Shown piece after piece: positions 8,787-58,758 of a DNA stretch of 64,000 nt. Numbering within the stretch: the stretch's first letter is position 1; each line of letters starts with the position of its first letter. The stretch is from positions 1 through 64,000 of IMG/VR virus record IMGVR_UViG_3300049846_000628, one strand, 5' to 3'. Below the pieces are notes generated by a model, which worked only from the letters and a program-made list of their open reading frames with translations, did no database searches and was not told the DNA's origin. A program made the position numbers and the translations under genes.

Positions 8787-8798
8787 ACTTTATTGAAA

Positions 8799-10270: not shown

Positions 10271-10282
10271 TCCATGGTCAAT

Positions 10283-26731: not shown

Positions 26732-26807
26732 TCCGGATACTTGGATTTGAACCAAGATTTTTCCACTTCCCAAAAGTGGTGCCATGACCAAGTTAGGCGA
26801 TATCCGG
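26732..26807 (-). tRNA. tRNA-Pro(TGG)
   Basis: Cloverleaf; CCACT-TTTGGGA-AGTGG anticodon arm; GGTTCAAATCC T arm. Confidence 0.9.
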
Positions 26808-27296
26808 GAGTATTAGTTGGTTAGCGTGGACTGCTGAATGACAACAAGCACATAATAGCACACATCCTTTTATTTCGTCAAGTATTCTACTTTGATTCCA
26901 ACAGCGTATATTAGCAAATTTTGGATCTTTTTTTGAAGGGTCTAAATGATGGACATGTAGTGCTGATGAATATTTATCATATCCACAAGAAATACATTTT
27001 CCACCCATAGATTCAATAATAAAATCCCGTTTTTTCTTACCCAATTCAAGAGTATATGTATTATGACATTTACCACATACTCGTTTTTTGTGCCCATAAA
27101 ACTTTTCTGGATTTGTTTCTCCACACATTCCACACTTGTGTGTGGTTTTTGAATTGTTTATAGAAGTATATTTTGATTTTAGATTATATTTTTTACACCA
27201 ATGTCTAATAGATGAAAGAGATTTATTTTCTTGTTTGGAAATATCATTCATGGACATTCCACTTTCAAGCATTTTTTCCAACAATTGTTTATCCAT
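26793..27296 (-). CDS. HNH endonuclease with N-terminal HTH
   Basis: CISCGY...LHVHHLDP...CVLLCACCHSAVH. Confidence 0.88.
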   Translation of the reverse strand: MDKQLLEKMLESGMSMNDISKQENKSLSSIRHWCKKYNLKSKYTSINNSKTTHKCGMCGETNPEKFYGHKKRVCGKCHNTYTLELGKKKRDFIIESMGGKCISCGYDKYSSALHVHHLDPSKKDPKFANIRCWNQSRILDEIKGCVLLCACCHSAVHANQLILPDIA

Positions 27297-27455
27297 AATA
27301 GTTTAGATTAGGTATACTATTATTTATACCAACCTACACTAGTTATTTATTTCGGTGTATAAGCATTATACCCATAATCGGGGCAATCGTCAAGCCTGCT
27401 CCACAAAGTCCCAACCAGATCGGACTTGCTGCAAGTGTCTCTACAATATGGAAAA

Positions 27456-28187
27456 TCATCTTCCTCTCCAGTTTTTATGTTCATAGTAAAAGTATTGGTC
27501 TACTTCATCAAGACCTGATAGAGGGGCACTTATACCCCACTCAGACCACTCTATACAAAACTGCCTGATATCGTGATTATGGACTATATTGTGCCCATAT
27601 ATTCTCACAAAAGAAGACATTGCAAATTGATATCTTTTATTATTGATAGGCATTATTAAGACCCCAATAAATCCATATTGCAATCGTGGAAAAATATATT
27701 AGGCTTCCGATTAAAAGTGTTTTAGTCATCATCTTCATCCTCGTAAGTAGATGGCTCTTCAAATAATTCGTCTATCTTCTGTTGTAAAACTATTCTTTGT
27801 AATTCTTGTAAATCTTCTTCTGTTAAAGATACCATTAGTTTAATGTAATTTTAAGAAAAGGAAGTAGCGGTGGAATAACACCTACAAGTCTTAGAAGTCC
27901 CTCAGCAAATAAAGCAAGAACCACCCAACCGACGCACATACTAATGATAGAAGCATTACGGTTGTGTCGTCGTATTGCTGCATCGATCATCTCCTTAACT
28001 TCACTGCGAGTTACATAATCATCATCATATGGTTCCATCATTTCTCATCTCCAAGAAACTTCGCAAGAGGATCTCTCCTAGTTTTAACAATCTCAACTGC
28101 TCTCTTATAGAACATATTATCAATGTTCCCAGAGGCTTCAAAAGTCTCCTTGATCTTCACCCAATTATCGTAGGTGTGCTGATCCAT
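27456..28187 (-). CDS. Cluster of small hypothetical genes (27456..27683, 27835..28041 and others)
   Basis: ORF track and manual reading. Confidence 0.5.
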
Positions 28188-28300
28188 AGGGTTTAAGTTG
28201 AATACTACTAGTTATGCTAGTGAGTATTTGAAGAAAGTCAAGTTTGTGTTGATACAAAAATATAGATTAAGACAATCTAAATTTTTGTAATTTTTCTAAA

Positions 28301-28387
28301 CGGTAGCGGTTAGATTCGAACTAACGGAGGTGTTACCCTCACTTGTTTTCAAGACAAGCGCAATAAACCGGACTCTGCCACGCTACC
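28301..28387 (-). tRNA. tRNA-Ser(TGA)
   Basis: CTTGT-CTTGAAA-ACAAG; long variable arm. Confidence 0.95.
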
Positions 28388-28455
28388 AGTATTTACGGAA
28401 TGTTAAGGAACTGAAAATATAAATATTTAAAGACCCTTCCGTTATTTATACATCT

Positions 28456-29079
28456 ATGATTGATGTAACTTGTTTAAATTGTAGCACATCTTTTAAGAAA
28501 TTACCATATGAAGTTAAAAGAACAAAAGGTAAAAACTTTTGTTGTATGAATTGCTTTAATGACTATCAAAGAAAAGATAGAATAAATCAAATCAAAGAGT
28601 GTGCTAACTGTGGTAAAAGTTTTCACAAGCGTCCAGCAGAACAAAAGAAAACAAAAAACCATTTTTGTTCTAGAAGTTGTGCTGCGACTTATAATAATAC
28701 CCACAAAACAAATGGAACTAGAGTATCAAAACTCGAAGTATTTTTACAAGAACAGTTAAGTCAAGAATATAATTTTGACTTTCACTTCAATAGAAAAGAT
28801 ACTATTAATTCAGAGTTAGATATTTACATTCCAGAAATTAATTTAGCATTTGAATTGAATGGTATTTTTCATTACGAACCAATTTATGGTGAAGAAAAAT
28901 TAAAGCAAACACAAAATAACGATGAAAGAAAATTTCAAGCGTGTCTGGAAAAAAATATAGAACTTTGTATTATTGATACTTCTTGGATGAAGTATAACAA
29001 AATAGAAAACTTCAAAAAAGTTTTAACTATTATTAAAGATATAATAACCAAAAAGTCCTCAACGGACTTCAAAATCTAA
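28456..29079 (+). CDS. Zn-ribbon plus PD-(D/E)xK (DUF559/Vsr-like) endonuclease
   Basis: Two CxxC...FC repeats; ELDIYIPEINLAFELNGIFHY. Confidence 0.75.
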   Translation: MIDVTCLNCSTSFKKLPYEVKRTKGKNFCCMNCFNDYQRKDRINQIKECANCGKSFHKRPAEQKKTKNHFCSRSCAATYNNTHKTNGTRVSKLEVFLQEQLSQEYNFDFHFNRKDTINSELDIYIPEINLAFELNGIFHYEPIYGEEKLKQTQNNDERKFQACLEKNIELCIIDTSWMKYNKIENFKKVLTIIKDIITKKSSTDFKI

Positions 29080-29316
29080 GCGTCTAACTTTACGTTGGCG
29101 TCTTGCTTCCTGAAAAGCAAGATCTTCATTTGAAAGAACACCAGACTTTGATTTTGTATGATAAGAGTTTAGCATAACAATAGAGGATAAGTCAACTGCT
29201 GAGATCTTATCACCACGAATGGTAGCCATATTAGAGCAACCACAAGTCACAGTTTTACTATGATGCCCCTCTATCTCCCTACCACAGGAGCGGCATCTGA
29301 TTCTTAAGTTTTCCAT
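29059..29316 (-). CDS. Zn-ribbon hypothetical protein
   Basis: CRSC...CGC. Confidence 0.65.
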   Translation of the reverse strand: MENLRIRCRSCGREIEGHHSKTVTCGCSNMATIRGDKISAVDLSSIVMLNSYHTKSKSGVLSNEDLAFQEARRQRKVRRLDFEVR

Positions 29317-29335
29317 TGCATTATAAGTTTAATTT

Positions 29336-29770
29336 TTATTCAGTAAATGAACGTAGCATCCAAACAAACTTGCCGTGAGCCTCATTCAAATCATCAAGAA
29401 GATTAATTGTACCTCTTGACTTTTGATTTTCTGCTTCAGTTGCAGCAGAGTTCAACATAGTAATTACTTTTTTATGATCTTCTAAAAGATCTTTGATCAT
29501 TTCCATTGAGGAAATATTAGTCTTTGCTTCCGAAACCCCAGAAACTTCCAGAACTCTTGAGAGAGAACTAATAGGCTTAACACCTAAAAATCTCATATGT
29601 TCTGATAGCCTATCAATTTCTTCTTGAACTGCAAGATATTGCTCTCCAAACAAATCGTGAATTTGTTTAAAATCTTCACCAACAACATGCCAGTGATAGA
29701 CCCAAGTTTTTTGAAATAATAAAAAGAGAGATGCTTGCGTATCACTCAGAAGTTTATATAGAGTTTCCAT
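29336..29770 (-). CDS. dps: Dps/ferritin-like protein
   Basis: YHWHVVG..F..IH.LF.EQY...IDRLSEHMR. Confidence 0.9.
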   Translation of the reverse strand: METLYKLLSDTQASLFLLFQKTWVYHWHVVGEDFKQIHDLFGEQYLAVQEEIDRLSEHMRFLGVKPISSLSRVLEVSGVSEAKTNISSMEMIKDLLEDHKKVITMLNSAATEAENQKSRGTINLLDDLNEAHGKFVWMLRSFTE

Positions 29771-29799
29771 TATACTTCTTTTTTGAAGTATTTATAAAG

Positions 29800-29871
29800 T
29801 GGGCAATATCGGATTCGAACCAATGACCAACTGCGTGTAAAGCAGCTGCGCTACCGCTGCGCTAATCGCCC
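29800..29871 (-). tRNA. tRNA-Val(TAC)
   Basis: GCTGC-TTTACAC-GCAGT cloverleaf. Confidence 0.95.
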
Positions 29872-30254
29872 AATAAAAGTCAATACTGACTCATTAAATA
29901 TTCTACAGTATTTGCTACATCATTCATAGCATCACGAAGACTTTCTCTTTGACCAGACTCTTGTTTGATAATGGGTCTATGATCGTCAGTAAGAGTCCAA
30001 CGCCATTGATTCATATCCTTACAAAACCAGAGATTAATTTTCATTCTTTGAATATTCCAGTTTAATCCAATTAATTAGGGCATTTAATTCCATCTTTTTT
30101 TCTTCAGTAAAATCAAATTTTTTATTGAAAAGATAAAAATCAAGTGCTTCAAGAGCAACTTCTCTATCGCGTTGGGAAATAAGAGACATAAACCTCCTAA
30201 CTTGCTTCTTATTATAAGGTAAAAGGGGGGTTTCGTCAACCCCCCATATGTATA

Positions 30255-31217
30255 TTAGTTACCGATACGACCAACAGCAATACGTGCTTTGTTGAGAACA
30301 GAACCTGCGAGAGGAACATAACCCAAATCATCAGCAATCATTTGTGCTTTTGTACTCAGTGCATAGTTCAAAGCACCGCGAATATCAGATGTCTTTGCAC
30401 CGTTACCAGTCTTATAAGCAAGAATCCAAGTCAGAGTAGAGATTGGATATGCACCAGCACCAGAAGGATTAGGACTTTCACCAGCAAGATTGCTATCCAG
30501 GGTAATACTGTTCAGAGCAGCAGCACCAGAGGTTGCAGAAGGAAGAACAAACTTACCTGCCTTATTTTGGATTGCTGCTGCCTGGAGTTTGTTTGCTTTT
30601 ACAAATCCAGTATTCACATAACCGATCGCACCAGGAGTGTTACGAATGGTTCCAGAAACACCTTCATTACCTTTAGCACCAATACCAACAGGCCAATTTA
30701 GTGCCTTACCTACACCATAAGTCCAACCACCGAAAGCATCCAGAGAATTAGTGAATGCAAAAGTAGTTCCAGAACCATCAGAACGATGAACAACTTTGAT
30801 TGCACCAGCAGCACAACCAACTTGCTTATAATCTTTGATACGTCCAGCAAAAATATCCACAGTCTGTTTCTGAGTGAGTTTCAGATTACAACCAGGCTTA
30901 TTATAAGCAACAGCAATCGTTCCACCCACCATAGGAATTTGAACGACACCACGCTTTACTTTTGCTGCTTCCGATGCCTTGATAGGTTCATCAGACGCAC
31001 CAAAATCGACGGTCCCAGCGATGAACTGACGAACACCAGCACCAGAACCGACAGATTGGTAATTAACACGATTTCCAGAAAACGCAGCATAGTCTTGGAA
31101 CCATCGTTGATAAATTGGGGCAGGAAATGTAGCACCCGCACCATTCAAAGCAGGTCCAGCAAATGCAGCAGCAGGAGCAGCAACCAGACCAACAGCAATA
31201 AAGTTTTTGAGTTTCAT
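30255..31217 (-). CDS. pstS: Phosphate ABC transporter substrate-binding protein
   Basis: GAGATFPAPIY, YQSVGSGAG, HRSDGSGTT; start MKLKNFI 31217. Confidence 0.96.
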   Translation of the reverse strand: MKLKNFIAVGLVAAPAAAFAGPALNGAGATFPAPIYQRWFQDYAAFSGNRVNYQSVGSGAGVRQFIAGTVDFGASDEPIKASEAAKVKRGVVQIPMVGGTIAVAYNKPGCNLKLTQKQTVDIFAGRIKDYKQVGCAAGAIKVVHRSDGSGTTFAFTNSLDAFGGWTYGVGKALNWPVGIGAKGNEGVSGTIRNTPGAIGYVNTGFVKANKLQAAAIQNKAGKFVLPSATSGAAALNSITLDSNLAGESPNPSGAGAYPISTLTWILAYKTGNGAKTSDIRGALNYALSTKAQMIADDLGYVPLAGSVLNKARIAVGRIGN

Positions 31218-31269
31218 AAAAAGTGAATAACTTCGTGAATAATTGTACTCGAATAAAATATGAAAGTCC

Positions 31270-31286
31270 ACTAAGATTTAGTTAAG
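31270..31286 (-). promoter_or_regulatory. Putative Pho box upstream of pstS
   Basis: CTTAACT and CTTAGTG at 11-bp spacing; second repeat degenerate. Confidence 0.45.
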
Positions 31287-31349
31287 GTTTGGATTTCATA
31301 AAAAAGCACCCCATAAAGAGGTGCTTTCACTCATACTATGAGTTGTTTA

Positions 31350-32864
31350 TCAGAACGTAAACTTGGTCTGAATCACACCACCAAAGTTGGAAGATGTACC
31401 AGCAAATGCCTGGTTGTTAGAGGCATAGAACACTGCAGGAGTTACAGTGATATTATCGGACACCTTATACTTGTAGAATACTTCCCACATCGTTGCATCC
31501 TTATCCAGTCCTTCAGCATTACCAGGTTGACCGATGGCGAAACCAGCGGAATTACCCTTAGCAAACACATCAGACCACTGGAGACCAGCATACCAAGTCT
31601 GAGAATCAGTAGCACCAGCAGGAGTTGCCTGACCTGCTGCATCCAGGCTTACGGTGTTCCAACCATAACCACCACTCACAGAAGGAATAATACCAGACTT
31701 AGAGGGTTGCCAATAAGCACTCAGAGAATATCCATTTGAGGTTTGACCAGCAACAAGAGCACCAGACTTACCACCAACAGCATTGAAGGTACGAACACGG
31801 GTGCCTTCAGTACCATAACGGTAACCGAATGCAATACCATAGTTAGGAGCACGATAACCAATCTGAGCAAGAGTGTTCAGAGCACCAGCTTCATTGAACT
31901 CACCCTTAGTGGAATCAGAACCACTTTGAGCAACATAGTTCACGCCAGCGACGAAACCACCTTTACCTTTTTTGGTAGGTTGTACCCATTGAGCACCAAA
32001 ACCAGAACCAGTTGCCTTGTTATAGACACCAGGAGCACCAGCAAGTTGGAAGAAGTCCAGAATCTCCGACTTATATGCAGTAGGAATCCAAGTCATCTCA
32101 GTGTTACGAACCAGAGCACCAGCAGTCAGAGTCACACCCTTAGCAAGTGCAGGGAACTGATAGTAGAGACGGTCAAGAGTAACTGCGTTTGCAGTGCTCT
32201 CTGCCTTATCCAGTTTGAATAGGGAAGAAGATGAACCGAAAGGTTGACTGGAGAAGTTACCAGAACGCAGACGAGTGCGGAGCAGGTCTTTACCAGTGAA
32301 CGAAGTATCAAGGTTCAGACGGAGATCATAGTTGAATGCAGTGTTACCAACATTCGTGCTAGCAGGATTCTTGGAAGTACCAGGAGTCCAAGCATTATCT
32401 ACGCCACCCAGAACAAAGTTTGCTTCACCACGCAGTTTGGTAGTGGTGGAGAACTGGGTTGCTTCCAGTTGACCAACTTTGGTTTCCAGACTTGCAACCT
32501 TACCTTGAATAACGGTGAGTTCGTCACGGAACTCATTAGCAAGACGCTTGAGTTCATCAGTAACTTCAGTCACACGGTCAAGGCAAGCATTCAGGAGTGC
32601 TGCTGCCTCATAGCGAGTCATTGCCTTACCACCAGCAAAAGTGCCGTTGGGGTAACCAGCAACGCAACCATAACGCTCTACAAGGTTGCTGAGTGCCTGA
32701 TATGCCCAGTCAGTAGGTTGCACATCAGAGAATTGGGTGACGCTTGTAGCCTGTTGTGCAGAATATTGATTGACTGCCGCCATATTAAGGTCTGCAGCAT
32801 TCGCGGCAACAGGAGCAACCATTCCCAGAGCAACAGGTGCGAGCATCAGTTGTTTGAGTTTCAT
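31350..32864 (-). CDS. Cyanobacterial SLH-domain porin (Som/OprB family)
   Basis: Signal peptide; FSDVQPTDWAYQAL SLH; QFSTTTKLRGE; C-terminal KFTF. Confidence 0.93.
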   Translation of the reverse strand: MKLKQLMLAPVALGMVAPVAANAADLNMAAVNQYSAQQATSVTQFSDVQPTDWAYQALSNLVERYGCVAGYPNGTFAGGKAMTRYEAAALLNACLDRVTEVTDELKRLANEFRDELTVIQGKVASLETKVGQLEATQFSTTTKLRGEANFVLGGVDNAWTPGTSKNPASTNVGNTAFNYDLRLNLDTSFTGKDLLRTRLRSGNFSSQPFGSSSSLFKLDKAESTANAVTLDRLYYQFPALAKGVTLTAGALVRNTEMTWIPTAYKSEILDFFQLAGAPGVYNKATGSGFGAQWVQPTKKGKGGFVAGVNYVAQSGSDSTKGEFNEAGALNTLAQIGYRAPNYGIAFGYRYGTEGTRVRTFNAVGGKSGALVAGQTSNGYSLSAYWQPSKSGIIPSVSGGYGWNTVSLDAAGQATPAGATDSQTWYAGLQWSDVFAKGNSAGFAIGQPGNAEGLDKDATMWEVFYKYKVSDNITVTPAVFYASNNQAFAGTSSNFGGVIQTKFTF

Positions 32865-32986
32865 AAAGTTTGTTTTTTTAGTACTAAACGACATACTGAG
32901 TTTCCGTGCAAATAGTTGCGGCACGGTCACATCAGGAGTCTATCTTAACATTTTCTTTGGGATCAGTCAAGCTTTTTGGTCTTTTA

Positions 32987-33058
32987 AGCGGAGTATCGGA
33001 TTCGAACCGACGACATCTAACTTGGAAGGATAGCGTTCTACCACTGAACTAACTCCGC
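32987..33058 (-). tRNA. tRNA-Gly(TCC)
   Basis: CTATC-CTTCCAA-GTTAG cloverleaf. Confidence 0.93.
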
Positions 33059-33134
33059 AAAGTGGGAGATTTCTCTCCCAGCACATTCCTTCACACGGAC
33101 ATATGAAGTATAAGACATAATGAATATTATGTCA

Positions 33135-33206
33135 AGCCCCCGACTGGATTTGAACCAGCGACCAACGGTTTACAAAACCGTTGCTCTACCACTGAGCTAC
33201 AAGGGC
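33135..33206 (-). tRNA. tRNA-Thr(TGT)
   Basis: ACGGT-TTTGTAA-ACCGT cloverleaf. Confidence 0.95.
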
Positions 33207-33296
33207 GAAACAGGGGAGGCCATCCCCCTGGCCTAAGCGAACTTAGGTCTTAGTTGGAAGGAGAGCTCTTGGACGGAACCGCAGGATCACTTCCAA

Positions 33297-33368
33297 CTCC
33301 ACAACCTGGATTCGAACCAGGGACCAAATGATTAACAGTCATCTGCGCTACCGCTGCGCCATTGTGGA
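33297..33368 (-). tRNA. tRNA-Asn(GTT)
   Basis: GATGA-CTGTTAA-TCATT cloverleaf. Confidence 0.95.
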
Positions 33369-33478
33369 ATGATGGAGTAAGTATAATATATCTCATAAGG
33401 ATATAACAGTGACTTACTCTCTATCACTTTTATATATGGATCATCTTTCTAGGATATCTGCCTAGCGATTACTCCAAG

Positions 33479-33551
33479 CAGGCAAGGAGGGACTCGAACC
33501 CCCAATCGACATCTTAGAAGGATGCTGCATTATCCATTATGCTACTTGCCC
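33479..33551 (-). tRNA. tRNA-Arg(TCT)
   Basis: GCATC-CTTCTAA-GATGT cloverleaf. Confidence 0.95.
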
Positions 33552-33691
33552 GTAAGAGACCTCCTGGTTTGTGCATCGTTGATAGGCATAGGAGGGGCAG
33601 GTCTTATGCGGAGTTTGGACCCCCGCTGCCTATGAAAGTATTATAGGATAGAGAGGGGCTTACGTCAAGCCCCTCCAACTATTCTATTGTA

Positions 33692-44554: not shown

Positions 44555-46801
44555 TCAGCGACCGAAATTTGGACCAGGATTTGCTTGTGATTTGTTCTTA
44601 TTTTCAACGTTCTTTGCACCTTGTCTCATAACTTGATCACGAGTTTGACCGCTTCTTTCTGCTGCTGCTCCGCCACCAGCACCATAGGTTGTTAATTTAC
44701 CACTATCAGTTCTACTTGCTGGTTTAGCAAATGGTGATGTATAAGAAGGAAGTGGTGCAGTTGGTCTGCTAAAAGGACTTGTATTTTGTGCTCTAGATGC
44801 AGCCGAATTGTTCGGGTTTAAAATACCACGGAACCACTCTCCAGGAGACTCAACAATGCCCTGAACAGTTTCAGAAGACATCTCCATCATTACATAAAGT
44901 GCCTCTTCTAAGGTGTCTACGTGCCCCTGAGATAAGAGATACTCAAGAACAAGATCAAAAGCATCATACTGCTCTTTAACACCTAAAACGTTTTTAGTTC
45001 TTTGCGACATTCTAGCAGTAGCAGCGGGAGAATAAGCACCACCAGAAAGTTTAGACTGTGCTTGTGGTTCTGGTGTTGAGGTTGTAGACTGTGGAGCAGC
45101 AGGTCTTAATGCACGAAGTTCATCAGCCTGCTTCGCCATTACACTTTGACCCGTACCCCTTTGAGTTCCAGCGGGAGTTACATTTTTAGCAAGAGTATTA
45201 GCATACTTTTTACGCCAAATATCTAAACCAGTGTCTCTTACCTTCGCCATTTGAGCAGCATCACCGCTCTTTCTAGCAGATGCTGCAGCCTTCATATATT
45301 CCCTTACCGCAGGTGACTCAGGAGCAGGTTGACGTGGAGGAGCAGGAGGGGCTGGTGGTCTTCTTGAACCTGCACCTGTTCCGCTGCCTCCTGCTGACGG
45401 GACTGGGGGTGCAGGTGGTCTTGAACCTACCTGATTTCCTCTTGGACCAGTTCCTGGTTGTGCGGCATAAGGTGGAAGACCTGGCATAGGGGGTCTTGAA
45501 GTAGATTGGTTTGGATACTCAGTAAATTTTCCTTTTCCAGATGTATCATAAACTACATATCCTCTCTTACCACCTTTAGTAATAGGATAACCTCTTCCAG
45601 GCATTACTTTTTGTAAGTTGCCTTGTCTGTTATAAATTTCAATAGGTTCTACTTTTTCTCTTATTGGGGCTGGTGCTCCTCTTCTTGGTCTTGATGGAGA
45701 TGTTGCTGGTGGTTGTGCTCGTAATTCTTTAGCACGTTTTACATCAACATCTTTTTGAATGTTACTACCAATATTTTTTAAAAATTGTCCTGTTTGTTGA
45801 AGTTCTCCTGGTGTGCCAGTATCTTTTATTCCTGGAGTAGCAGCCGCAACTGAAGCAGCAGTTTTAGACAAATCACCTATACCACCAACTGTAGCGCCAC
45901 CAAGTCTTTGAGTTACGCTTGATTGCCCTGATGCTGCTCGTTTAACATCAATAGCACCACCAATTAATCCACCAACTCCAGTAACTGCTGCAACAGTTGG
46001 AGCAACGCCATATTTCAAAAGACCTTTTGTAACACCTTTTACTCTAGGTCCAGGAGTAAGAGCTCGTGTAACTCTACCTACTGTATCCCTAAGACCAATG
46101 CTAGGCCAACCTTGCTGCCTCTGTGGAGTTCCTGATGGTTGTCTGGATGCTGGAGTAGTAGCAGTTGGTTTTGGTGATGGTGATTGTGTAGGTGCTGATG
46201 GTTTTGCTGCTTGTTGTGCTCTCCCCTTTGATGTAAAACTAGAAAGCCAATCTCCAAAACGTGCAAAAGACCCTTTATCTGCACCTGGAGGTGGAGTTAC
46301 CGATGGTCTTGTAGGTCTTCCACTTGAAACTCCGGGAGCATAAAGAGGATTAGAAGATGGTTTGGGAGATGGTGCAGTAGTTCCTAGTTTTACTGGTGCT
46401 GCTTGAATTATTGATGGTTTTGGTGCTCTCGTTGCTGTTTGAGTTGCTGTTTGAACCGCTTGACGACCTTTAAAAAGATTGCCGAGTCCAGATAAAAATC
46501 CTAATCTTTCTTGAAGTAAATTTTCAACTTGCTCTTCTGTTAGTTCTTCTGCTGATTCATTTAATTGAGTAATAAAAGATTCAACTTCATGAAGTTCTGG
46601 TGTAAGGACATTTTCTAGAAATGATTCATATATTTCATCCCAACTATAATCACTAAGATCATACCCCTCATTTACAAGTTCATTAACACTTTCTGCAACA
46701 GTATCTAACACACTGTTTAAAAATAATTCTATTTCATCAGTATAAACAGAATTATAGGCTTCGTATAAATCACGAATTGTTTCTGATGTAAATGAAGACA
46801 T
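44555..46801 (-). CDS. Large low-complexity Pro/Gly-rich protein (probable virion/internal protein)
   Basis: ORF track; late promoter TATAAA upstream. Confidence 0.6.
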   Translation of the reverse strand: MSSFTSETIRDLYEAYNSVYTDEIELFLNSVLDTVAESVNELVNEGYDLSDYSWDEIYESFLENVLTPELHEVESFITQLNESAEELTEEQVENLLQERLGFLSGLGNLFKGRQAVQTATQTATRAPKPSIIQAAPVKLGTTAPSPKPSSNPLYAPGVSSGRPTRPSVTPPPGADKGSFARFGDWLSSFTSKGRAQQAAKPSAPTQSPSPKPTATTPASRQPSGTPQRQQGWPSIGLRDTVGRVTRALTPGPRVKGVTKGLLKYGVAPTVAAVTGVGGLIGGAIDVKRAASGQSSVTQRLGGATVGGIGDLSKTAASVAAATPGIKDTGTPGELQQTGQFLKNIGSNIQKDVDVKRAKELRAQPPATSPSRPRRGAPAPIREKVEPIEIYNRQGNLQKVMPGRGYPITKGGKRGYVVYDTSGKGKFTEYPNQSTSRPPMPGLPPYAAQPGTGPRGNQVGSRPPAPPVPSAGGSGTGAGSRRPPAPPAPPRQPAPESPAVREYMKAAASARKSGDAAQMAKVRDTGLDIWRKKYANTLAKNVTPAGTQRGTGQSVMAKQADELRALRPAAPQSTTSTPEPQAQSKLSGGAYSPAATARMSQRTKNVLGVKEQYDAFDLVLEYLLSQGHVDTLEEALYVMMEMSSETVQGIVESPGEWFRGILNPNNSAASRAQNTSPFSRPTAPLPSYTSPFAKPASRTDSGKLTTYGAGGGAAAERSGQTRDQVMRQGAKNVENKNKSQANPGPNFGR

Positions 46802-47248: not shown

Positions 47249-47284
47249 TTATTTTCGTTTTTAGATATTTATAAAAAAAGAGGG

Positions 47285-47440
47285 TCAGAGACCCTCAGTA
47301 TCTTTCAACCATTCTTTGCAGTAATCGTAATCACCAAACATAAACTCATCACACTCTGCTGCTTCTTTATAAGCATTCAGAATTTCCTGTTCACACCATT
47401 CATCATAGTTTGAATCCTGAGAAAGTATTTTTGGTAACAT
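47285..47440 (-). CDS. Small acidic protein (51 aa, MLPKILSQDSNYDEWCEQE...)
   Basis: Manual translation; its first codons overlap the duplicated nrdB tail. Confidence 0.65.
   Translation of the reverse strand: MLPKILSQDSNYDEWCEQEILNAYKEAAECDEFMFGDYDYCKEWLKDTEGL
47403..47440 (-). pseudogene. nrdB: Orphan copy of the last 12 codons of nrdB (VTKNTFSGFKL*)
   Basis: 33/38 nt identical to 48503..48540. Confidence 0.8.
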
Positions 47441-47892
47441 TAGATTATATTACACCCTGGTTCTAATAATTTATATCTCTTTCCATCATAAGCAACTCCA
47501 GAGTAATAATTTGCAGTATTCAAAACGGAGAATATATTGTATTCTCTTCCATCACCAAATGGCGTTATATCTATCAAGTTTCCATAAGTATTCTTCCAAA
47601 TACTATGATATATTGCACACCCGTAAGTTTCATCATCAACATCTGTGATTAGGTAATAACCACTTAGTTTTTCTCCACCATAAGTGCTTACATAATGATT
47701 TACATTATTGTGACAGTTTGCATCGGAACATAATGGTTTAGATACTACGGGAACTTTTAGCAGAGTACTTGAAAATTTACAATACTCTTGAAGTTTTATT
47801 ACACAATCATCTTCTGGTAGTGATATTCTAAACTTTCTCAATACTCCATCCATTTTTTCTTGGCCCTCTTCTATCGTACTTAATTGCGGCAC
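47440..47892 (-). CDS. Hypothetical protein (150 aa)
   Basis: ORF track. Confidence 0.65.
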   Translation of the reverse strand: MPQLSTIEEGQEKMDGVLRKFRISLPEDDCVIKLQEYCKFSSTLLKVPVVSKPLCSDANCHNNVNHYVSTYGGEKLSGYYLITDVDDETYGCAIYHSIWKNTYGNLIDITPFGDGREYNIFSVLNTANYYSGVAYDGKRYKLLEPGCNII

Positions 47893-48442
47893 TCATAGTA
47901 GCATATGAAATATTTTGAGACTTACAAAACTCTTTTAATGCTCCAATAATAATATACTCTTTATTTTCTGGAGAAACAATTCTCCAAGTTTTAGAGTTTG
48001 GATTATCTTTACCAAATTTTGGTGCTTTATTTTGACTTATTTTATTTCTTGTTTCTTGTGATAATTTAACACCATATCTTGGATTGTTCTTACCAGCAAC
48101 CTTTTCACTTATTCTTTTCTTTGCTTCTTCACTATGTTTTCTTCCGCTAAATCCCTTCGTTCTCTGTCCTCCAGGTTTTCCTTCTCCACCAAGATTTTGA
48201 TTTAACAGAACTCCACCATCACACTCTCTTTTCCAAAGTGCTATATGCTTTATCTCAAGTTCTATTGCTTCTTCTTTGGATAGTCCAGATTTTACAATCC
48301 ACCTTCTTTCTCTTGGAGGCAAAATTTCAGCACCATTTTTTCGGGAATGACTGGAATTAATTCTTCTTGGTCTTCCATAACCAACATAAAAGGGAGAACT
48401 AAAGTCCTCCCTTAAGTAATAATACAGAATATAGTTATTCAT
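47828..48442 (-). CDS. GIY-YIG homing endonuclease with NUMOD3
   Basis: YILYYYLRED..PFYVGYG.PRR; RKHSEEAKKRISE. Confidence 0.9.
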   Translation of the reverse strand: MNNYILYYYLREDFSSPFYVGYGRPRRINSSHSRKNGAEILPPRERRWIVKSGLSKEEAIELEIKHIALWKRECDGGVLLNQNLGGEGKPGGQRTKGFSGRKHSEEAKKRISEKVAGKNNPRYGVKLSQETRNKISQNKAPKFGKDNPNSKTWRIVSPENKEYIIIGALKEFCKSQNISYATMSAAIKYDRRGPRKNGWSIEKV

Positions 48443-48502
48443 TTTAAGACTGAACTTACCTATTACTATTTATATAATACACTATTTCAGTCTTAAAGTC
48501 AA

Positions 48503-49687
48503 TCATAATTGGAATCCAGAAAAAGTATCTTTGGTAACATCTTGCTTAATACCACCAACAATATATGACTGTACCTGCGTTTGCTGTGGTGCCACTTGAA
48601 GTCCCTTAGAACTGATCCAATGTTCGGTCCAGGGAAGTGGATTATTCTTCGCAGGAATATCATAAAGTGGTTTCAGTCCAATTGCCTTCATTCTACGATT
48701 TGCAATCCATTCAACATACTGTTGCAACAATTTGTCGTTCAGACCAATCATCGAACCATCCTTGAACAGATACTCTGCCCAAAGTTTTTCCTGATTTACA
48801 GCATTCTCAAAAGTCTTGTAGACCCACTGTTCTTCTTCTTTAGCAATACGTGCCATCTCAGGATCATCACCCTCTTTCCACTTATTCATAATGTTCTGAG
48901 TGATAACCAGATGCTGGTTCTCATCACGGGCAATTAGTGAGATGATTTTTGCACTTCCTTCCATAAGCTTGAGTTCGCCAAATGCAAAACTACAAGCGAA
49001 GCTGACGTAAAAGCGAATACCTTCAAGAATATTAACGTTTGCAACTGCTCTAAAGAGTTTGCGTTTGAGTTCATACCTTGCTTCTTGTGCGTAGGGTACT
49101 TGTTCTAATGCGTGAACCCACTCATTTGAATTATCATACTGATGAGCACTATTGATAAAGTCGTTGTATGCCTGAGTTACACTCACAGCACGTTCCATAA
49201 TACGATCATCTTTCAGAATAGTATCAAAAATTTCAGATGGGTCTGAATAAACATTTTTGATAATATAGGTGTATGAACGGGAATGGATCATCTCCATAAA
49301 CTCCCATACCTTCATACAAGCTTCCAGTTCGGGAAGGGAACAGTAAGGCGCGAACGCCATACCAGGACCACGACCCTGAACTGAGTCCAGCATCACCTGA
49401 TACTTGAGATTGCTGGTAAAGATGTGTTTTTGCTCTGGGCGTAGCATATGATAATCGCTACGATCTTTTTGAAGAGATACCTCTTCGGGTCTCCAGAAAT
49501 AACCCAATTGCTGTGTTGTTAATTTGTCGAAAATTGGATACTTGTAAGAATCGTATCTCTGTATTCCTAGTGGTTGCCCAAAAAACATTGGTTGCTTTTT
49601 GGTATCTACTTCATTGGAGTTAAAAACGGTCATAGACTCGACCACTTTTTTATCCTCCAAACCTGTTTTAAATCTTACAAGACTCAC
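48503..49687 (-). CDS. nrdB: Ribonucleotide reductase class Ia beta subunit
   Basis: FWRPEE, EMIHSRSY, ILEGIRFY, RDENQH. Confidence 0.97.
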   Translation of the reverse strand: MSLVRFKTGLEDKKVVESMTVFNSNEVDTKKQPMFFGQPLGIQRYDSYKYPIFDKLTTQQLGYFWRPEEVSLQKDRSDYHMLRPEQKHIFTSNLKYQVMLDSVQGRGPGMAFAPYCSLPELEACMKVWEFMEMIHSRSYTYIIKNVYSDPSEIFDTILKDDRIMERAVSVTQAYNDFINSAHQYDNSNEWVHALEQVPYAQEARYELKRKLFRAVANVNILEGIRFYVSFACSFAFGELKLMEGSAKIISLIARDENQHLVITQNIMNKWKEGDDPEMARIAKEEEQWVYKTFENAVNQEKLWAEYLFKDGSMIGLNDKLLQQYVEWIANRRMKAIGLKPLYDIPAKNNPLPWTEHWISSKGLQVAPQQTQVQSYIVGGIKQDVTKDTFSGFQL

Positions 49688-51965
49688 AATCTTCCTCCTC
49701 TGATTCTAGAATTTCGGACATTAAACTTTCAAGCGACTGTTTGGTTTCTTCAACTTCATCAGTCTTAGCATCATAAGTGTTTTGATAGTAGCTGGTTTTC
49801 CAGCCGTACTTATATGTAGTCAAAAGGTCTTGCGCCATTACTGAAGTAGGAACTTCATTATCGGGATAATGCTCTGGATTATAGGACCAGTTTCCAGAAA
49901 TCGCTTGATCAAAGAACTTCTGCATAACAGCGACAATATTAATGTAACCGCGATTGCTAGGCATATCCCAAAGCAACGTATAGTTGTTCTTAAGAGTTTG
50001 ATACTGGGGAACAATTTGCTTAAGTGGACCCTTCTTTGACTTCTTAATGGACAGATATCCGCGTGGTGGTTCGATTCCATTAGTTGCATTTGACACAACG
50101 GAACTGCTCTCCGATGGCATCTGTGCGGACAGTGTTGAGTTTCTAACCCCATACTGCTTAACCTGTACTCTAAGACCTTCCCAATCATATTTCAATTCAT
50201 TTGGAACGATTTCATCCACATCCTTTTTGTATGTATCAATCGGAAGAATCCCTTGACCATACTTGGTGCGATGAGAGTATTCACAAGCACCCTTTTCTTT
50301 AGCAAGGTTAACCGTTGCCTGAATGAGATAGTATTGGAATGCCTCAGTCAGATCATGTACTAGTTTCCAAGCACCAGGATCGTCATAATGCTCCCCGTTC
50401 TTAGCAAGATAGTGAGCAAGACCAATATAACCAATACCAAGAGAACGACGCGCTCTGGTGGCGATTTCCGCCGCTTTGACGGGGTATCCTTGGAAGTCAA
50501 TCAGTTCGTCCAGAGAACGCACTGAAAGGTCACAGAGAGCGTCTAGATCATCAAGAGACTTAAGTTTACCAACATTGATAGCACTCAAGATACAGAGGGC
50601 AATTTCACCCTCAGTATCATCAATATGTTGAATAGGTTTAGTAGGAAGAGTAATCTCTTGGCATAGATTACTCATCTCAACCTTATCAACAAAAGAAGAG
50701 TGAGAGTTGCAGTGATCGATGTTCATAATGTACAAACGACCAGTTTCTGCTCGCTCTTTTAGAAGGTCCAAAAAGAGTTCTTGAGCTCCGATAGTTTTTC
50801 TTGGAATAGACTCATCTCGTTCGTAACTAACATATAAGTCGTCAAATCCATCAGTGCCAAAAGCATCATACAGACCAGGAACGGAGTGAGGAGAGAAGAG
50901 GGAAATTTCTTCGTTGCGGATGAATCGTTCATAGAACAGTTTGCTGATTTGGATACTGTAGTCTAACTTACGAACACGGTTATCTTCGGTTCCTTTGTTA
51001 TTCTTTAATACTAGGATGTCTTCGATTTCTTGGTGCCAGATTGGAAAGTGGACCGTCGCGCTTCCTCCTCGTATACCATTTTGCGTACAGCAACGGACAG
51101 TGCTTTCAAACTTTTTGAGAAACGGTACAACGCCAGTGTGCTGGACTTCCCCACCTCTAATTTTACTGTTGATACCACGGATTCGACCTGCGTTGATACC
51201 GATTCCCGCCCTTTGTGCAACGTATCTACCAATAGCCATATCAGAGCTAAAGATAGAATCGAGGGTGTCATCAACATCAACAAGAACACAACTAGCATAT
51301 TGTCTAAGTGGCGTTCGCACTCCTGCCATGATGGGAGTTGGAATGTTGATTTTGTGCTTGGAGATTGCGTCATAGTACCTCTTAACGTAATCTAGACGGG
51401 TTTCTTTAGGATACTTGGAAAAGATTGTTGCAGCAATCAAAAGGTACATAAACTGTGGCGTTTCATAAAGTGCCCCAGTGCTTCTGTCCTGCACGAGGTA
51501 CTTATCAACGACCTGACGTAGACCTGCATAAGTAAACAGATAGTCACGGCTATGATCAATGAACGACTGAAGTTTATCAAACTCTTCATCAGTATAAAGA
51601 TCAAGAATTTCTGAGTCATAAACACCTCTACCAACACAAAGCTCTACGTGTTGCTTTACTGTTGGGCATTCGTGCATACGACCAAACAACTGCTTACGGA
51701 GAGCAAACAGAAGTAGGCGGGCTGCAACAAATTGATAGTTTGGGTGCTCTAAATCAATCAGGTCAGAAGCAGAACGAATCAGGATCTCCTGAATCTCTGC
51801 AGTTGTAATACCATCATAAAATTGAATACCAGACTGCATCTCTACCTGAGATGTAGATACATTAGCAAGATCTTTACAGGCTTCTTCCACCATAATGTGG
51901 AGTTTATTTAAATCAAGGGGTTCGGTTTTACCATTTCTTTTAACGACTTTCGTTCCGTTGCTCAT
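49668..51965 (-). CDS. nrdA: Ribonucleotide reductase class Ia alpha subunit
   Basis: ATP cone; SNLCQEI; KTSYYQ; C-terminal CESCKI. Confidence 0.98.
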   Translation of the reverse strand: MSNGTKVVKRNGKTEPLDLNKLHIMVEEACKDLANVSTSQVEMQSGIQFYDGITTAEIQEILIRSASDLIDLEHPNYQFVAARLLLFALRKQLFGRMHECPTVKQHVELCVGRGVYDSEILDLYTDEEFDKLQSFIDHSRDYLFTYAGLRQVVDKYLVQDRSTGALYETPQFMYLLIAATIFSKYPKETRLDYVKRYYDAISKHKINIPTPIMAGVRTPLRQYASCVLVDVDDTLDSIFSSDMAIGRYVAQRAGIGINAGRIRGINSKIRGGEVQHTGVVPFLKKFESTVRCCTQNGIRGGSATVHFPIWHQEIEDILVLKNNKGTEDNRVRKLDYSIQISKLFYERFIRNEEISLFSPHSVPGLYDAFGTDGFDDLYVSYERDESIPRKTIGAQELFLDLLKERAETGRLYIMNIDHCNSHSSFVDKVEMSNLCQEITLPTKPIQHIDDTEGEIALCILSAINVGKLKSLDDLDALCDLSVRSLDELIDFQGYPVKAAEIATRARRSLGIGYIGLAHYLAKNGEHYDDPGAWKLVHDLTEAFQYYLIQATVNLAKEKGACEYSHRTKYGQGILPIDTYKKDVDEIVPNELKYDWEGLRVQVKQYGVRNSTLSAQMPSESSSVVSNATNGIEPPRGYLSIKKSKKGPLKQIVPQYQTLKNNYTLLWDMPSNRGYINIVAVMQKFFDQAISGNWSYNPEHYPDNEVPTSVMAQDLLTTYKYGWKTSYYQNTYDAKTDEVEETKQSLESLMSEILESEEEDCESCKI

Positions 51966-58608: not shown

Positions 58609-58681
58609 TACCCGTGAGAAGATTCGAACTTCCACTGTATGGATTCTAAGTCCACCCTCTCTACCGTTGGAGTACACGGGC
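58609..58681 (-). tRNA. tRNA-Leu(TAG), short variable arm
   Basis: GTGGA-CTTAGAA-TCCAT; 73 nt. Confidence 0.85.
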
Positions 58682-58685
58682 AAAG

Positions 58686-58758
58686 TGGAGAATAGGAGAC
58701 TCGAACTCCTGACACCCGCCTTGCAAAGGCGATGCTCTACCAACTGAGCTAATTCCCC
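58686..58758 (-). tRNA. tRNA-Ala(TGC)
   Basis: G3.U70 pair; TCGCC-TTTGCAA-GGCGG. Confidence 0.95.

What the first reader, a model, noticed from the sequence alone, without database searches (positions are those of the whole stretch)
47285..48540. Third case: 1,100-bp GIY-YIG cassette in the nrdB tail bounded by a 38-bp diverged duplication
Seen: 48503-48540 (DVTKDTFSGFQL*) and 47403-47440 (VTKNTFSGFKL*) match at 33/38 nt, exactly 1,100 bp apart, and enclose a GIY-YIG gene plus a 150-aa ORF. The downstream copy also encodes the start of a 51-aa gene. Inference: the duplication preserves both nrdB's tail and the overlapping gene. The five mismatches argue against a fresh target-site duplication and for an imported replacement tail.
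Basis: partly seen in the sequence, partly recalled or inferred. Interest (0 to 1): 0.75.

Follow-up and report, generated by a model that had tools for sequence, protein, structure and literature searches.

The report
Homing-endonuclease cassette splitting nrdB overlap
A selfish, mobile endonuclease gene cassette sits at the end of a cyanophage's ribonucleotide-reductase gene. It is tolerated because the 38 bases that used to serve two overlapping genes at once are present twice, one copy for each gene. It is a well-preserved natural example of a known kind of mobile element, with some new details.

Summary
Window 48503-48540 and 47403-47440 match at 33/38 nt, exactly 1,100 bp apart. They bracket a 204-aa NUMOD3 endonuclease and a 137/150-aa ORF.

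In endonuclease-free relatives, including S-SKS1, one copy is both the nrdB tail and the first 38 nt of an overlapping small gene. The cassette occurs at this site in about 75 further metagenomic cyanophage contigs, in nrdB backgrounds of 77-98% identity. Three nuclease types and decayed forms are found, so it is a mobile free-standing homing-endonuclease cassette.

Across relatives, the upstream copies vary at nrdB wobble positions and the downstream copies at small-gene wobble positions. Each copy has kept one of the two jobs.

Two further findings:
- Cassette-bearing nrdB alleles carry Glu-to-Gln changes 63-78 nt before the stop (46/48 against 0/77). This is a candidate cleavage-immunity patch.
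- The cassette leader mimics the Glu-type site, carries a TATAAATA late promoter, and forms a hairpin ending at the endonuclease start codon, as in T4.

The "imported replacement tail" idea holds for some relatives. In this window it is the downstream copy and the small gene that travel with the cassette.

Verdict: a new variant of a known kind.

The parts
48503..49687 (-). nrdB (class Ia ribonucleotide reductase small subunit, 394 aa), complete, with its own stop codon at 48503-48505.
   Evidence: Pfam Ribonuc_red_sm 1.9e-55 and phrog_86 2.6e-166. It is 80-97% identical to 80 IMG/VR relatives.
48535..48650 (-). HEG-associated divergent tract inside the nrdB 3' end.
   Evidence: Identity to the nearest HEG-free alleles falls to 71-80% here, against about 90-98% on either side. 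Identity to HEG-bearing L092/L128/L144 stays at 87-93%.
48569..48583 (-). Gln codons 369, 371 and 373 (QTQVQ) where HEG-free alleles encode ETEVE. This is the candidate cleavage-immunity patch.
   Evidence: The codon 24 before the end is Gln in 46/48 distinct HEG-bearing alleles and in 0/77 HEG-free alleles, Fisher p = 3e-32.
48503..48540 (-). Repeat copy A: the functional last 12 codons plus stop of nrdB. In the other frame it is now only a 13-codon stub (MLPKILFLDSNYD*).
   Evidence: Its 3 differences from the HEG-free consensus are all synonymous in the nrdB frame. Across relatives, A copies vary at nrdB third codon positions.
48472..48491 (-). Leader segment resembling the Glu-type nrdB site of HEG-free alleles. 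It may be a homing-site mimic, a possible operator, or a relic of native nrdB.
   Evidence: 14/20 matches in the window and 17-18/20 in L121/L150/L147. All 36 leaders have their best match in the same part of nrdB (consensus offsets 47-58). The highest score in 1000 shuffles was 16.
48443..48497 (-). RNA hairpin with 12-bp arms at 48486-48497 and 48443-48454. The 3' arm ends directly at the endonuclease AUG.
   Evidence: MFE -19.1 kcal/mol, z = -2.4. Compensatory changes: GC to AU in 9 sequences and UA to CG in 1. 90.8% of cells are paired, against 15-55% when the partner is slid.
48467..48474 (-). TATAAATA, a T4-type late-promoter box, in the hairpin loop.
   Evidence: Invariant in 33 of the 36 leaders aligned. 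The motif occurs 12 times in the window against 4.8 expected, 11 of them on the gene strand.
47828..48442 (-). Free-standing homing endonuclease, 204 aa. It has a divergent GIY-YIG-like N-terminal domain, a NUMOD3 motif, and a C-terminal DNA-binding domain.
   Evidence: NUMOD3 1.7e-13 and phrog_314 'homing endonuclease'. hhalign probability 100% to the type-2 protein, which hits LEM-3_GIY-YIG. The C-terminal part of the model matches I-HmuI and the I-TevI DNA-binding domain. dN/dS is 0.11.
47440..47853 (-). orf150 (137 aa from the ATG at 47853), a conserved passenger protein of unknown function. It overlaps the endonuclease 3' end by 26 nt.
   Evidence: Over 100 close homologues, none with a Pfam domain. 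It lies next to a HEG after nrdB in all but one (L164) of the related loci where the upstream region is held. dN/dS is 0.145. In distant relatives the domain is fused to GIY-YIG endonucleases. The confident model has no solved structural relative.
47403..47440 (-). Repeat copy B: the first 38 nt of the small gene. The nrdB-frame relic VTKNTFSGFKL* is still open.
   Evidence: It is identical to HEG-free allele L085. Its 2 differences from the nearest HEG-free consensus are synonymous in the small-gene frame. Across relatives, B copies vary at small-gene third codon positions.
47285..47440 (-). Small conserved gene (51 aa) of unknown function. In HEG-free relatives it starts inside the nrdB tail.
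   Evidence: dN/dS is 0.086. It is co-inherited with the cassette in this window.
47280..47296 (-). Intrinsic terminator hairpin plus T-run that ends the nrd operon. It is followed by another TATAAATA at 47266-47273.
   Evidence: The same terminator module follows nrdB directly in small-gene-less relatives.

Best explanation
What it is. This is a free-standing homing-endonuclease (HEG) cassette lodged at the 3' end of nrdB in an uncultured T4-like cyanophage.

Ancestral state (shown). The last 38 nt of nrdB also encode the first 12 codons of a small downstream gene.

This genome (shown). Those 38 nt occur twice, flanking an insert made of a leader, the endonuclease and orf150.
- Copy A now serves only nrdB.
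- Copy B now serves only the small gene.
- So neither gene is damaged, and each copy has since evolved under a single reading frame.

The cassette is mobile (shown).
- It occupies the same site in many phage lineages.
- Its similarity pattern is discordant with that of nrdB.
- Different nuclease modules have been swapped in upstream of a constant orf150.
- Decayed copies exist.

Spread (inferred).
- In mixed infections the endonuclease recognises and cuts the conserved Glu-type sequence (PQETEVES coding region), about 63-78 nt before the nrdB stop, in cassette-free genomes.
- Double-strand-break repair then copies the cassette from the cassette-bearing genome.
- Crossovers fall in the short conserved sequences around it: the nrdB body or tail on the left, and copy B or the terminator module on the right. 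This is why relatives differ in which copy is the imported one.
- Cassette-bearing genomes are protected by Gln codons (G to C at first codon positions) in that patch.

Expression (inferred from the T4 precedent).
- Read-through nrd transcripts fold a hairpin that occludes the endonuclease start.
- Transcripts from the TATAAATA box in the hairpin loop lack the 5' arm and can be translated late in infection.
- The leader's resemblance to the Glu-type site may let the enzyme repress its own promoter.

orf150 (inferred). It is a hitch-hiking or accessory protein whose domain is elsewhere fused to GIY-YIG endonucleases.
For: Repeat and genes.

Single overlapping copy in HEG-free relatives: S-SKS1 is annotated with a 38-nt overlap, and most of the 80 IMG/VR loci show the same.

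Same cassette at the same site:
- About 75 further loci carry it, in nrdB backgrounds of 77-98% identity.
- Three endonuclease types all end in ...NGWSIE(K)V across the orf150 start.
- L163 has a truncated HEG and L164 has none.

Frame-specific variation, in mean bits per position:
- A copies: 1.08 at nrdB third codon positions, against 0.59 and 0.27 at the other two.
- B copies: 0.78 at small-gene third codon positions, against 0.20 and 0.26.
- Single overlapping copies: 0.27 or less at all three.

Mosaic boundaries.

Glu/Gln association: 46/48 against 0/77. It includes the matched pair L054 (ESE, no cassette) and L057 (QSQ, with cassette).

Leader mimic of the Glu-type site: up to 18/20 matches, always in the same part of nrdB.

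Hairpin, covariation and late-promoter box.

Purifying selection on the HEG and on orf150.

HEG-bearing and HEG-free alleles come from the same metagenomes, for example 3300043446, 3300047564 and 3300047510.

Precedents:
- T4 hairpin plus late-promoter control, operator mimicry by I-TevI, and co-conversion (PMC2988022).
- MobE acting on nrdB and trans-mobilising a neighbour (PMC2790892).
Against: - No cleavage, homing or expression has been measured.
- The N-terminal nuclease domain of this protein is not recognised by Pfam or by sequence search against PDB chains. Its structure model is poor there.
- Two cassette-bearing alleles keep Glu-type sequence (L090, L121).
- Relatedness among contigs inflates the Fisher test.
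- The window's own leader match, 14/20, is not significant alone: 58 of 200 shuffles reach it.
- A sigma-70-like TTGACT-17-TATTAT match also overlaps the leader. This could give early transcripts that lack the 5' arm of the hairpin.
- No clear Shine-Dalgarno sequence precedes the AUG.
- HEG-free loci with tail and head in tandem (L020, L054, L055, L059) leave open that a plain duplication came before the insertion.
Confidence: 0.8

Rival explanations
1. Duplication first, insertion second. A simple 38-nt tandem duplication uncoupled nrdB from the small gene and created an intergenic joint. Endonuclease cassettes later landed in that joint. On this view the cassette neither caused nor carried the duplication.
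For: - HEG-free loci L020, L054, L055 and L059 have a complete nrdB tail followed at once (GTGA overlap) by a small-gene head of the MxPKIL..D.NYDEW type.
- Their heads match copy B of HEG-bearing L117 and of L057/L159.
- L054 keeps Glu-type codons, as a never-invaded allele would.
Against: - In relatives that have no small gene at all (L089, L112), the cassette is still bracketed by a second nrdB tail, and the break falls at the same point. So the duplication goes with the cassette, not with the need to uncouple two genes.
- The tandem state is rare: 4 of about 80 HEG-free loci.
- It could equally be a footprint of cassette loss between the two TGA triplets.
Confidence: 0.2
2. The Glu-to-Gln patch is not the recognition or immunity site. 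It is either a neutral marker that hitch-hiked from the first donor, or a change that co-evolved with orf150 or the RNR. The true cleavage site lies elsewhere.
For: - Free-standing endonucleases often cut some distance from their insertion site (PMC2988022).
- L090 and L121 carry the cassette with Glu-type codons.
- Flanking sequence around the patch follows the local nrdB background in L088-type loci.
Against: - The patch is Gln-type in very different nrdB backgrounds and with different codon spellings. That fits repeated selection better than a single hitch-hiking event.
- The leader of every cassette mimics exactly this stretch, in its Glu-type form.
- No HEG-free allele among 77 has Gln there.
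Confidence: 0.25
3. The repeat is a fresh target-site duplication made by a transposase-like insertion, or the insert is an intron or intein that is removed from nrdB.
For: Only the bare fact that a direct repeat flanks an insert.
Against: - No transposase or integrase is present.
- GIY-YIG enzymes leave 2-nt overhangs, not 38 nt (established knowledge of the family).
- The copies are diverged, and the arrangement is shared by dozens of diverged phages.
- nrdB is complete with its own stop codon before the insert.
- Rfam finds no intron in the window.
- The insert is not in frame with nrdB.
Confidence: 0.02

Closest known systems
Free-standing homing endonucleases of T4-like phages (Seg and Mob proteins, 'intronless homing'), especially MobE at the nrdA-nrdB locus
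   Same: - A stand-alone endonuclease gene sits beside an RNR gene of a T4-like phage.
- It spreads by break repair, with co-conversion of flanking DNA and trans-mobilisation of neighbours (PMC2790892, PMC2988022).
- Here the evidence is mosaic boundaries at the cassette and a passenger ORF.
   Different: - MobE is an HNH enzyme lying between nrdA and nrdB, and it is promoterless.
- This cassette has a GIY-YIG-like/NUMOD3 enzyme after nrdB and its own late-promoter box.
- It sits inside a two-gene overlap that had to be duplicated.
- No activity has been tested here.
Hairpin plus late-promoter control, and operator mimicry, of T4 I-TevI, I-TevII, I-TevIII, SegB and Aeh1 MobE
   Same: - A late-promoter box lies inside a hairpin whose 3' arm covers the translation start.
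- A sequence overlapping the promoter resembles the homing site: 15/20 for I-TevI (PMC2988022).
- Here the resemblance is 14/20 in the window and up to 18/20 in relatives. The hairpin is supported by covariation.
   Different: - In T4 the hairpin sequesters a clear Shine-Dalgarno sequence. Here none is evident, and the arm abuts the AUG itself.
- Promoter use, repression and RNA folding are all untested.
Fungal mitochondrial mobile endonuclease ORFs that create 'gene hybrids' (Allomyces atp6; Glomus atp6, atp9, cox2, nad3)
   Same: - The architecture is gene body, then inserted C-terminal copy, then endonuclease ORF, then native C-terminal remnant. The native-like copy lies downstream (PMC3630166).
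- The same pattern is seen in type-2 relatives: upstream copy 15-16 mismatches, downstream copy 0-1.
   Different: - Those are in organelles, and the ORF is often in frame with the host gene. The downstream remnant is usually dead.
- Here the host is a phage and the endonuclease is a separate gene.
- The downstream copy stays alive as the start of another gene.
- In this window it is the downstream copy that came in with the cassette.
I-TevI / I-HmuI type modular endonucleases (nuclease domain, NUMOD3, helix-turn-helix DNA-binding domain)
   Same: - NUMOD3 motif.
- The C-terminal model matches I-HmuI (E = 7e-3) and the I-TevI DNA-binding domain.
- Type 1 and type 2 enzymes share the DNA-binding half but differ in the nuclease half, as expected for modular enzymes aimed at one site.
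   Different: - It is not intron-encoded.
- The nuclease domain is too diverged for Pfam.
- The target site and cut geometry are unknown.

Membership tests
GIY-YIG homing endonuclease (I-TevI / Seg type) | An N-terminal GIY-YIG catalytic domain recognisable by a family model. | tested here: inconclusive
   - Pfam GIY-YIG and LEM-3_GIY-YIG do not hit the window protein, even at E = 10.
- A profile search against PDB sequences finds nothing.
- The type-2 protein at the same site hits LEM-3_GIY-YIG at 1e-8.
- hhalign aligns the two families from residue 6 onward at probability 100%, but most of the score comes from the C-terminal half.
GIY-YIG homing endonuclease (I-TevI / Seg type) | Conserved catalytic pattern: GIY ... 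YIG about 10 residues apart, then Arg, then Glu, then Asn. | tested here: met
   The alignment of 15 type-1 proteins has these invariant residues: Y7-Y8-Y9, Y19-x-G21, R26/R27, H32, E63 and N81/N83, in that order. This is a pattern match only. The AF2 model gives a beta-beta-beta-alpha layout there, but at low confidence.
GIY-YIG homing endonuclease (I-TevI / Seg type) | A modular DNA-binding region (NUMOD3 plus a helix-turn-helix type domain). | tested here: met
   NUMOD3 scores 1.7e-13, above Pfam's cut-off. The C-terminal 55 residues are modelled at pLDDT about 80-87 and match I-HmuI and the I-TevI DNA-binding domain.
Mobile homing element (any family) | Presence/absence polymorphism at one precise site in otherwise homologous genomes, with phylogenetic discordance. 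| tested here: met
   - About 80 HEG-free and about 75 HEG-bearing loci share the same site.
- L088 has nrdB at 80% identity but the HEG at 95%. L117 has nrdB at 97% but the HEG at 91%.
- There is a sharp identity step at the nrdB stop.
Mobile homing element (any family) | Site-specific cleavage of the empty allele, and super-Mendelian inheritance. | not testable with these tools
   This needs enzyme assays and phage crosses. Only indirect evidence exists: the Glu/Gln association and the leader mimic.
Endonuclease 'gene hybrid' with C-terminal duplication (fungal mORF type) | An inserted gene 3' end, then an endonuclease ORF, then the native 3' end, with the downstream copy closer to empty alleles. 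| tested here: inconclusive
   - Across 27 distinct arrangements, the downstream copy is closer to the nearest empty allele in 16, the upstream copy in 8, with 3 ties.
- In this window the counts are upstream 3 mismatches and downstream 2.
- Here the downstream copy is the one linked to the cassette.
Group I intron or intein in nrdB | The insert interrupts the reading frame and is removed by splicing. | tested here: not met
   nrdB ends with its own stop codon before the insert. There is no Rfam intron in the window. The insert contains separate genes.

The most novel reading that the evidence does not exclude
The cassette leader may be one piece of sequence doing two jobs.
- As DNA, it is a copy of the enzyme's own Glu-type target. 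It overlaps the late promoter, so it could act as an autorepressor operator.
- As RNA, the same bases form the 5' arm of the hairpin that blocks translation of read-through transcripts.

Alongside it, orf150 may represent an undescribed partner domain of homing endonucleases, with no Pfam family and no solved fold. It is encoded separately here and fused to GIY-YIG nucleases elsewhere. Its role could be in target choice, in immunity, or in handling the RNR. That would explain why it stays constant while the nuclease modules turn over.
Probability: 0.25. Interest if true: 0.7.

Novelty: new variant of a known kind. Interest (0 to 1): 0.55.

Why it matters
It shows how a selfish endonuclease gene can settle inside a stretch of DNA that codes for two proteins at once. 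The stretch is duplicated, and each copy then specialises, giving a clean natural example of overlap resolution followed by subfunctionalisation.

The comparison of about 155 natural alleles yields specific, testable predictions:
- a roughly 20-30 bp recognition region in a conserved RNR gene;
- the three G-to-C changes that should confer immunity;
- a promoter/hairpin/operator module that parallels T4.

It flags a widespread, uncharacterised protein domain (orf150) that keeps company with homing endonucleases.

It marks the nrdB 3' end as a recombination boundary in marine and freshwater cyanophage populations. This matters when nrdB or neighbouring genes are used as phylogenetic markers.

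Tried and rejected
- **Other repeats.** I looked for similar flanking repeats around the genome's other four GIY-like genes. None reached 24/30.
- **Naming orf150.** Pfam, PHROGs, a PDB profile search, ESM Atlas, Foldseek against PDB, VIA wide search and AFDB clusters gave only uncharacterised relatives. The weak YunG, SEC-C and DUF551 leads were not pursued because their scores were below useful levels.
- **Cultured phages.** tblastn of orf150 against 50,697 GenBank phage records gave no match.
- **Nuclease domain.** Pfam at relaxed thresholds and PDB sequence profiles did not recognise the type-1 nuclease domain. Its AF2 model was too poor for fold assignment.
- **Rfam.** A scan of the whole window found no intron at nrdB.
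- **Leader match in the window alone.** It is not significant by itself. It became convincing only with relatives.
- **CNNNG motif.** I considered whether an I-TevI-type CNNNG cleavage motif distinguishes Glu-type from Gln-type alleles. By eye it does not, so I make no claim about the cut position.
- **Literature.** Searches for a prior description of this cassette in cyanophages found none in the held library.
Full report
**Setting**

The window is the first 64 kb of a 211-kb IMG/VR virus record. By nrdB similarity it is a T4-like cyanomyovirus. The nearest named relatives are Synechococcus phages S-SKS1 and S-SRM01, at about 80% nucleotide identity.

All genes in the region lie on the minus strand:
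- nrdA, 49668-51965
- nrdB, 48503-49687
- a 204-aa ORF, 47828-48442
- a 150-aa ORF, 47440-47892 (the likely ATG at 47853 gives 137 aa)
- a 51-aa ORF, 47285-47440
- an intrinsic terminator, 47280-47296

The repeat finder reports 47402-47440 and 48502-48540 as a direct repeat, 34/39 identical and exactly 1100 bp apart.
- The upstream copy (A) is the last 12 codons plus the stop of nrdB.
- The downstream copy (B) is the first 38 nt of the 51-aa gene. In the nrdB frame it still reads VTKNTFSGFKL*.

The 204-aa protein carries a NUMOD3 motif and hits a PHROG 'homing endonuclease' family. The 150-aa ORF has no Pfam family.

**What relatives show**

A search with NrdB returned 80 IMG/VR loci at 80-97% protein identity. 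tblastn mapping of all local genes gave the following:
- Most loci have no endonuclease.
- Where the small gene is present, it usually starts 38 nt before the nrdB stop.
- S-SKS1 is annotated the same way.

So the ancestral state is a single 38-nt stretch read in two frames.

A second search, with orf150, returned another 80 loci. In every one that holds the upstream region, the order is nrdB, endonuclease, orf150, then usually copy B and the small gene; the one exception, L164, lacks the endonuclease.
- The nrdB backgrounds range from 77 to 98% identity to the window's.
- The endonuclease is 72-96% identical (type 1), or belongs to one of two other types.
- Type 2 has a Pfam-recognised LEM-3-like GIY-YIG domain. 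Type 3 resembles the genome's four other GIY-like paralogues.
- All three types end with the same few residues across the orf150 start codon.
- L163 has a truncated endonuclease and L164 has none.

Similarity is discordant. L088 has nrdB at 80% but the endonuclease at 95% and the small gene at 100%. L117 has nrdB at 97% but the endonuclease at 91%. Cassette-bearing and cassette-free alleles come from the same metagenomes.

This is the expected picture of invasion, spread, module exchange and decay for a homing element. The endonuclease and orf150 are both under purifying selection, with median dN/dS of 0.11 and 0.145.

**The two copies have divided the labour**

Relative to the consensus of the nearest cassette-free alleles:
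- Copy A of the window differs at three positions. All three are synonymous for NrdB, and two would change the small protein.
- Copy B differs at two positions. Both are synonymous for the small protein, and both would change NrdB.

Across relatives, mean variability per position class is:

| Set | nrdB 3rd / small-gene 2nd | nrdB 1st / small-gene 3rd | nrdB 2nd / small-gene 1st |
|---|---|---|---|
| 19 distinct A copies | 1.08 bits | 0.59 | 0.27 |
| 13 distinct B copies | 0.20 | 0.78 | 0.26 |
| Single overlapping copies in cassette-free alleles | 0.12 | 0.27 | 0.0 |

This is direct evidence that the duplication released a dual-coding constraint.

**Which copy is 'imported'?**

By sequence alone the window is ambiguous. 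A is 35/38 and B is 36/38 to the nearest cassette-free alleles, and B is 38/38 to cassette-free L085.

Across 27 distinct arrangements, B is closer to the nearest empty allele in 16, A in 8, with 3 ties. The extreme cases are the type-2 cassettes L089, L118 and L137, where A has 15-16 mismatches and B has 0-1. These match the fungal mitochondrial 'gene hybrid' architecture: inserted C-terminus, endonuclease ORF, native C-terminus (PMC3630166).

In relatives with no small gene at all (L089, L112), a second nrdB tail still follows orf150, broken at the same point. So the duplication belongs to the cassette and is not only a rescue of the small gene.

Against L088, L103 and L106, which have distant nrdB backgrounds:
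- Identity is 75-82% through nrdB, including copy A.
- It jumps to 93-100% about 20 nt after the nrdB stop.
- It stays high through the endonuclease, orf150, copy B and most of the small gene.
- It collapses after the terminator.

So here copy B and the small gene came with the cassette, and copy A belongs to the resident nrdB.

The relatives therefore show crossovers at different places: in the nrdB body or tail on the left, and in copy B or the conserved terminator module on the right.

**A candidate target and immunity patch**

I aligned the last 70 codons of nrdB from all loci.
- Cassette-free alleles almost always encode PQETEVESY, 63-78 nt before the stop (68 of 77 distinct alleles). The rest keep the Glu positions.
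- Cassette-bearing alleles encode QQTQVQ or ETQVQ.
- The middle Glu codon is Gln in 46 of 48 distinct cassette-bearing alleles and in 0 of 77 cassette-free alleles (Fisher p = 3e-32, not corrected for relatedness).
- The change is G to C at first codon positions. It occurs in very different backgrounds and with different codon spellings.
- The close pair L054 (no cassette, ESE) and L057 (cassette, QSQ) shows it as well.

In the window the Gln codons are at 48569-48583. They lie in a roughly 110-nt tract (about 48535-48650) that is only 71-80% identical to the nearest empty alleles but 87-93% identical to several cassette-bearing ones.

I infer that the endonuclease recognises the Glu-type sequence and that the Gln-type sequence is resistant. 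L090 and L121 are exceptions.

**The leader**

Between the nrdB stop and the endonuclease AUG lie 60 nt.
- They fold into a hairpin with a 12-bp stem (48486-48497 pairing with 48443-48454). The 3' arm ends at the AUG. MFE is -19.1 kcal/mol, z = -2.4.
- Across 36 distinct leaders, 90.8% of cells pair, against 15-55% for slid controls. Compensatory changes are GC to AU in nine sequences and UA to CG in one.
- The loop holds TATAAATA (48467-48474), the T4-type late-promoter box. The motif occurs 12 times in the window against 4.8 expected, 11 of them on the gene strand.

This arrangement matches the one described for I-TevI, I-TevII, I-TevIII, SegB and Aeh1 MobE. There, read-through transcripts are translationally silent and late transcripts that start inside the hairpin are active (PMC2988022).

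Unexpectedly, the leader's 5' arm and loop resemble the Glu-type nrdB patch:
- 14/20 in the window, which is not significant alone
- 17-18/20 in L121, L150 and L147
- 16/20 in type-2 leaders, in a shifted register
- All 36 leaders have their best match in the same part of nrdB (consensus offsets 47-58).
- In 1000 shuffles the highest score was 16.

I-TevI has a 15/20 homing-site mimic over its own late promoter, which it uses for autorepression. The same may apply here. Alternatively, the mimic is a relic of the native nrdB 3' end. Either way it points independently to the patch as the sequence the enzyme reads.

**The proteins**

*Endonuclease.*
- Pfam sees only NUMOD3 in the window's endonuclease.
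- The invariant residues of 15 homologues follow the GIY-YIG catalytic order.
- hhalign links it to the Pfam-recognised type 2 at probability 100%.
- Its structure model is poor overall (pLDDT 58.5). The confident C-terminal domain matches I-HmuI and the I-TevI DNA-binding domain.
- Named-phage relatives are at most 45% identical. They are annotated as Seg-like, group I intron or GIY-YIG endonucleases.

*orf150.*
- It has over 100 close homologues, all unnamed, and no homologue in 50,697 GenBank phage records.
- It gives a confident model (pLDDT 83.5) with no solved structural relative and only uncharacterised AlphaFold DB neighbours.
- A profile search found 320 representative clusters. In several, the domain is fused to the N-terminus of LEM-3-like GIY-YIG/NUMOD3 endonucleases, or to the C-terminus of DUF723/treble-clef repeat proteins.
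- It is therefore an endonuclease-associated module of unknown role. A hitch-hiking role is also possible, as with the neighbour that MobE mobilises in trans (PMC2790892).

**Open points**

Four cassette-free loci (L020, L054, L055, L059) have the nrdB tail followed at once by a separate small-gene head. That head matches copy B of certain cassette-bearing loci and still carries the alternate-frame imprint of an nrdB tail. They may be footprints of cassette loss or the state before insertion. L054's Glu-type patch favours the second.

Other unresolved points:
- A sigma-70-like match overlaps the leader.
- No Shine-Dalgarno sequence is evident before the endonuclease AUG.
- Nothing here has been tested at the bench.

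**Verdict**

The finding is real, and its core interpretation is right: a duplication that keeps two overlapping genes intact around a mobile endonuclease cassette.

The 'imported tail' detail is true of some relatives but reversed in this window.

The element is a new variant of a known kind. It combines T4-style intronless homing, a gene-end duplication like that of fungal mitochondrial mobile ORFs, subfunctionalisation of a dual-coding segment, and an uncharacterised companion protein.

Noticed in passing
window 7971-10202 (minus strand): psbA (9105-10202) reads ...EVMHERNA and then runs into stop codons. About 215 nt further on, the frame resumes with [12 protein letters not shown].... This looks like the short psbA intron known from S-PM2-type cyanophages, but Rfam's gathering scan did not call a group I intron. 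A GIY-like/NUMOD3 endonuclease gene (7971-8645), with two TATAAATA boxes upstream, follows psbA.
   Followed up: partly
genome positions 142081-142680, 164389-164928, 176877-177536 (outside the window) and window 7971-8645: There are four further GIY-like endonuclease paralogues, 36-43% identical to the nrdB-linked one. They resemble the type-3 endonuclease found at the nrdB site in L125 and L165. None has a flanking repeat of 24/30 or better.
   Followed up: partly
L024/L104 (nrdA ends 3392, nrdB starts 4001), L046, L047, L050: Some relatives carry other insertions in the same operon. L024 has about 600 nt between nrdA and nrdB. L046 has about 970 nt there, with a GIY-like match. In L047 and L050 the nrdA matches stop at residue 435, which suggests an intein, an intron or a split gene.
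   Followed up: no
L091, L095, L102, L134, L140, L142, L158 (downstream of orf150): In these loci copy B is missing directly after orf150. About 600 nt holding another gene (starting MNAQDFRSLQEAY / MDAQ...) lie between orf150 and the small gene, where one is present. This may be a second insertion or a rearrangement.
   Followed up: no
window 25801-25898, 10179-10286, 33559-33595; tRNAs at 26732-33551 and 58609-58758: Rfam gathering-level hits: a wcaG RNA motif, PhotoRC-II RNA just upstream of psbA, an abiF RNA match next to a tRNA cluster, and nine tRNA genes, all on the minus strand.
   Followed up: no
window 44555-46801 (minus strand): A 748-aa Pro/Ser/Gly/Ala-rich low-complexity protein lies downstream of the operon. 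It is poorly conserved among relatives (22-69% over parts) and has only unknown-function PHROG hits.
   Followed up: no
window 47266-47273 and relatives' terminator regions: The terminator after the nrd operon is followed at once by another TATAAATA box. This terminator-plus-promoter module is conserved in relatives whether nrdB, the small gene or copy B precedes it. It probably serves as the right-hand homology for recombination.
   Followed up: partly
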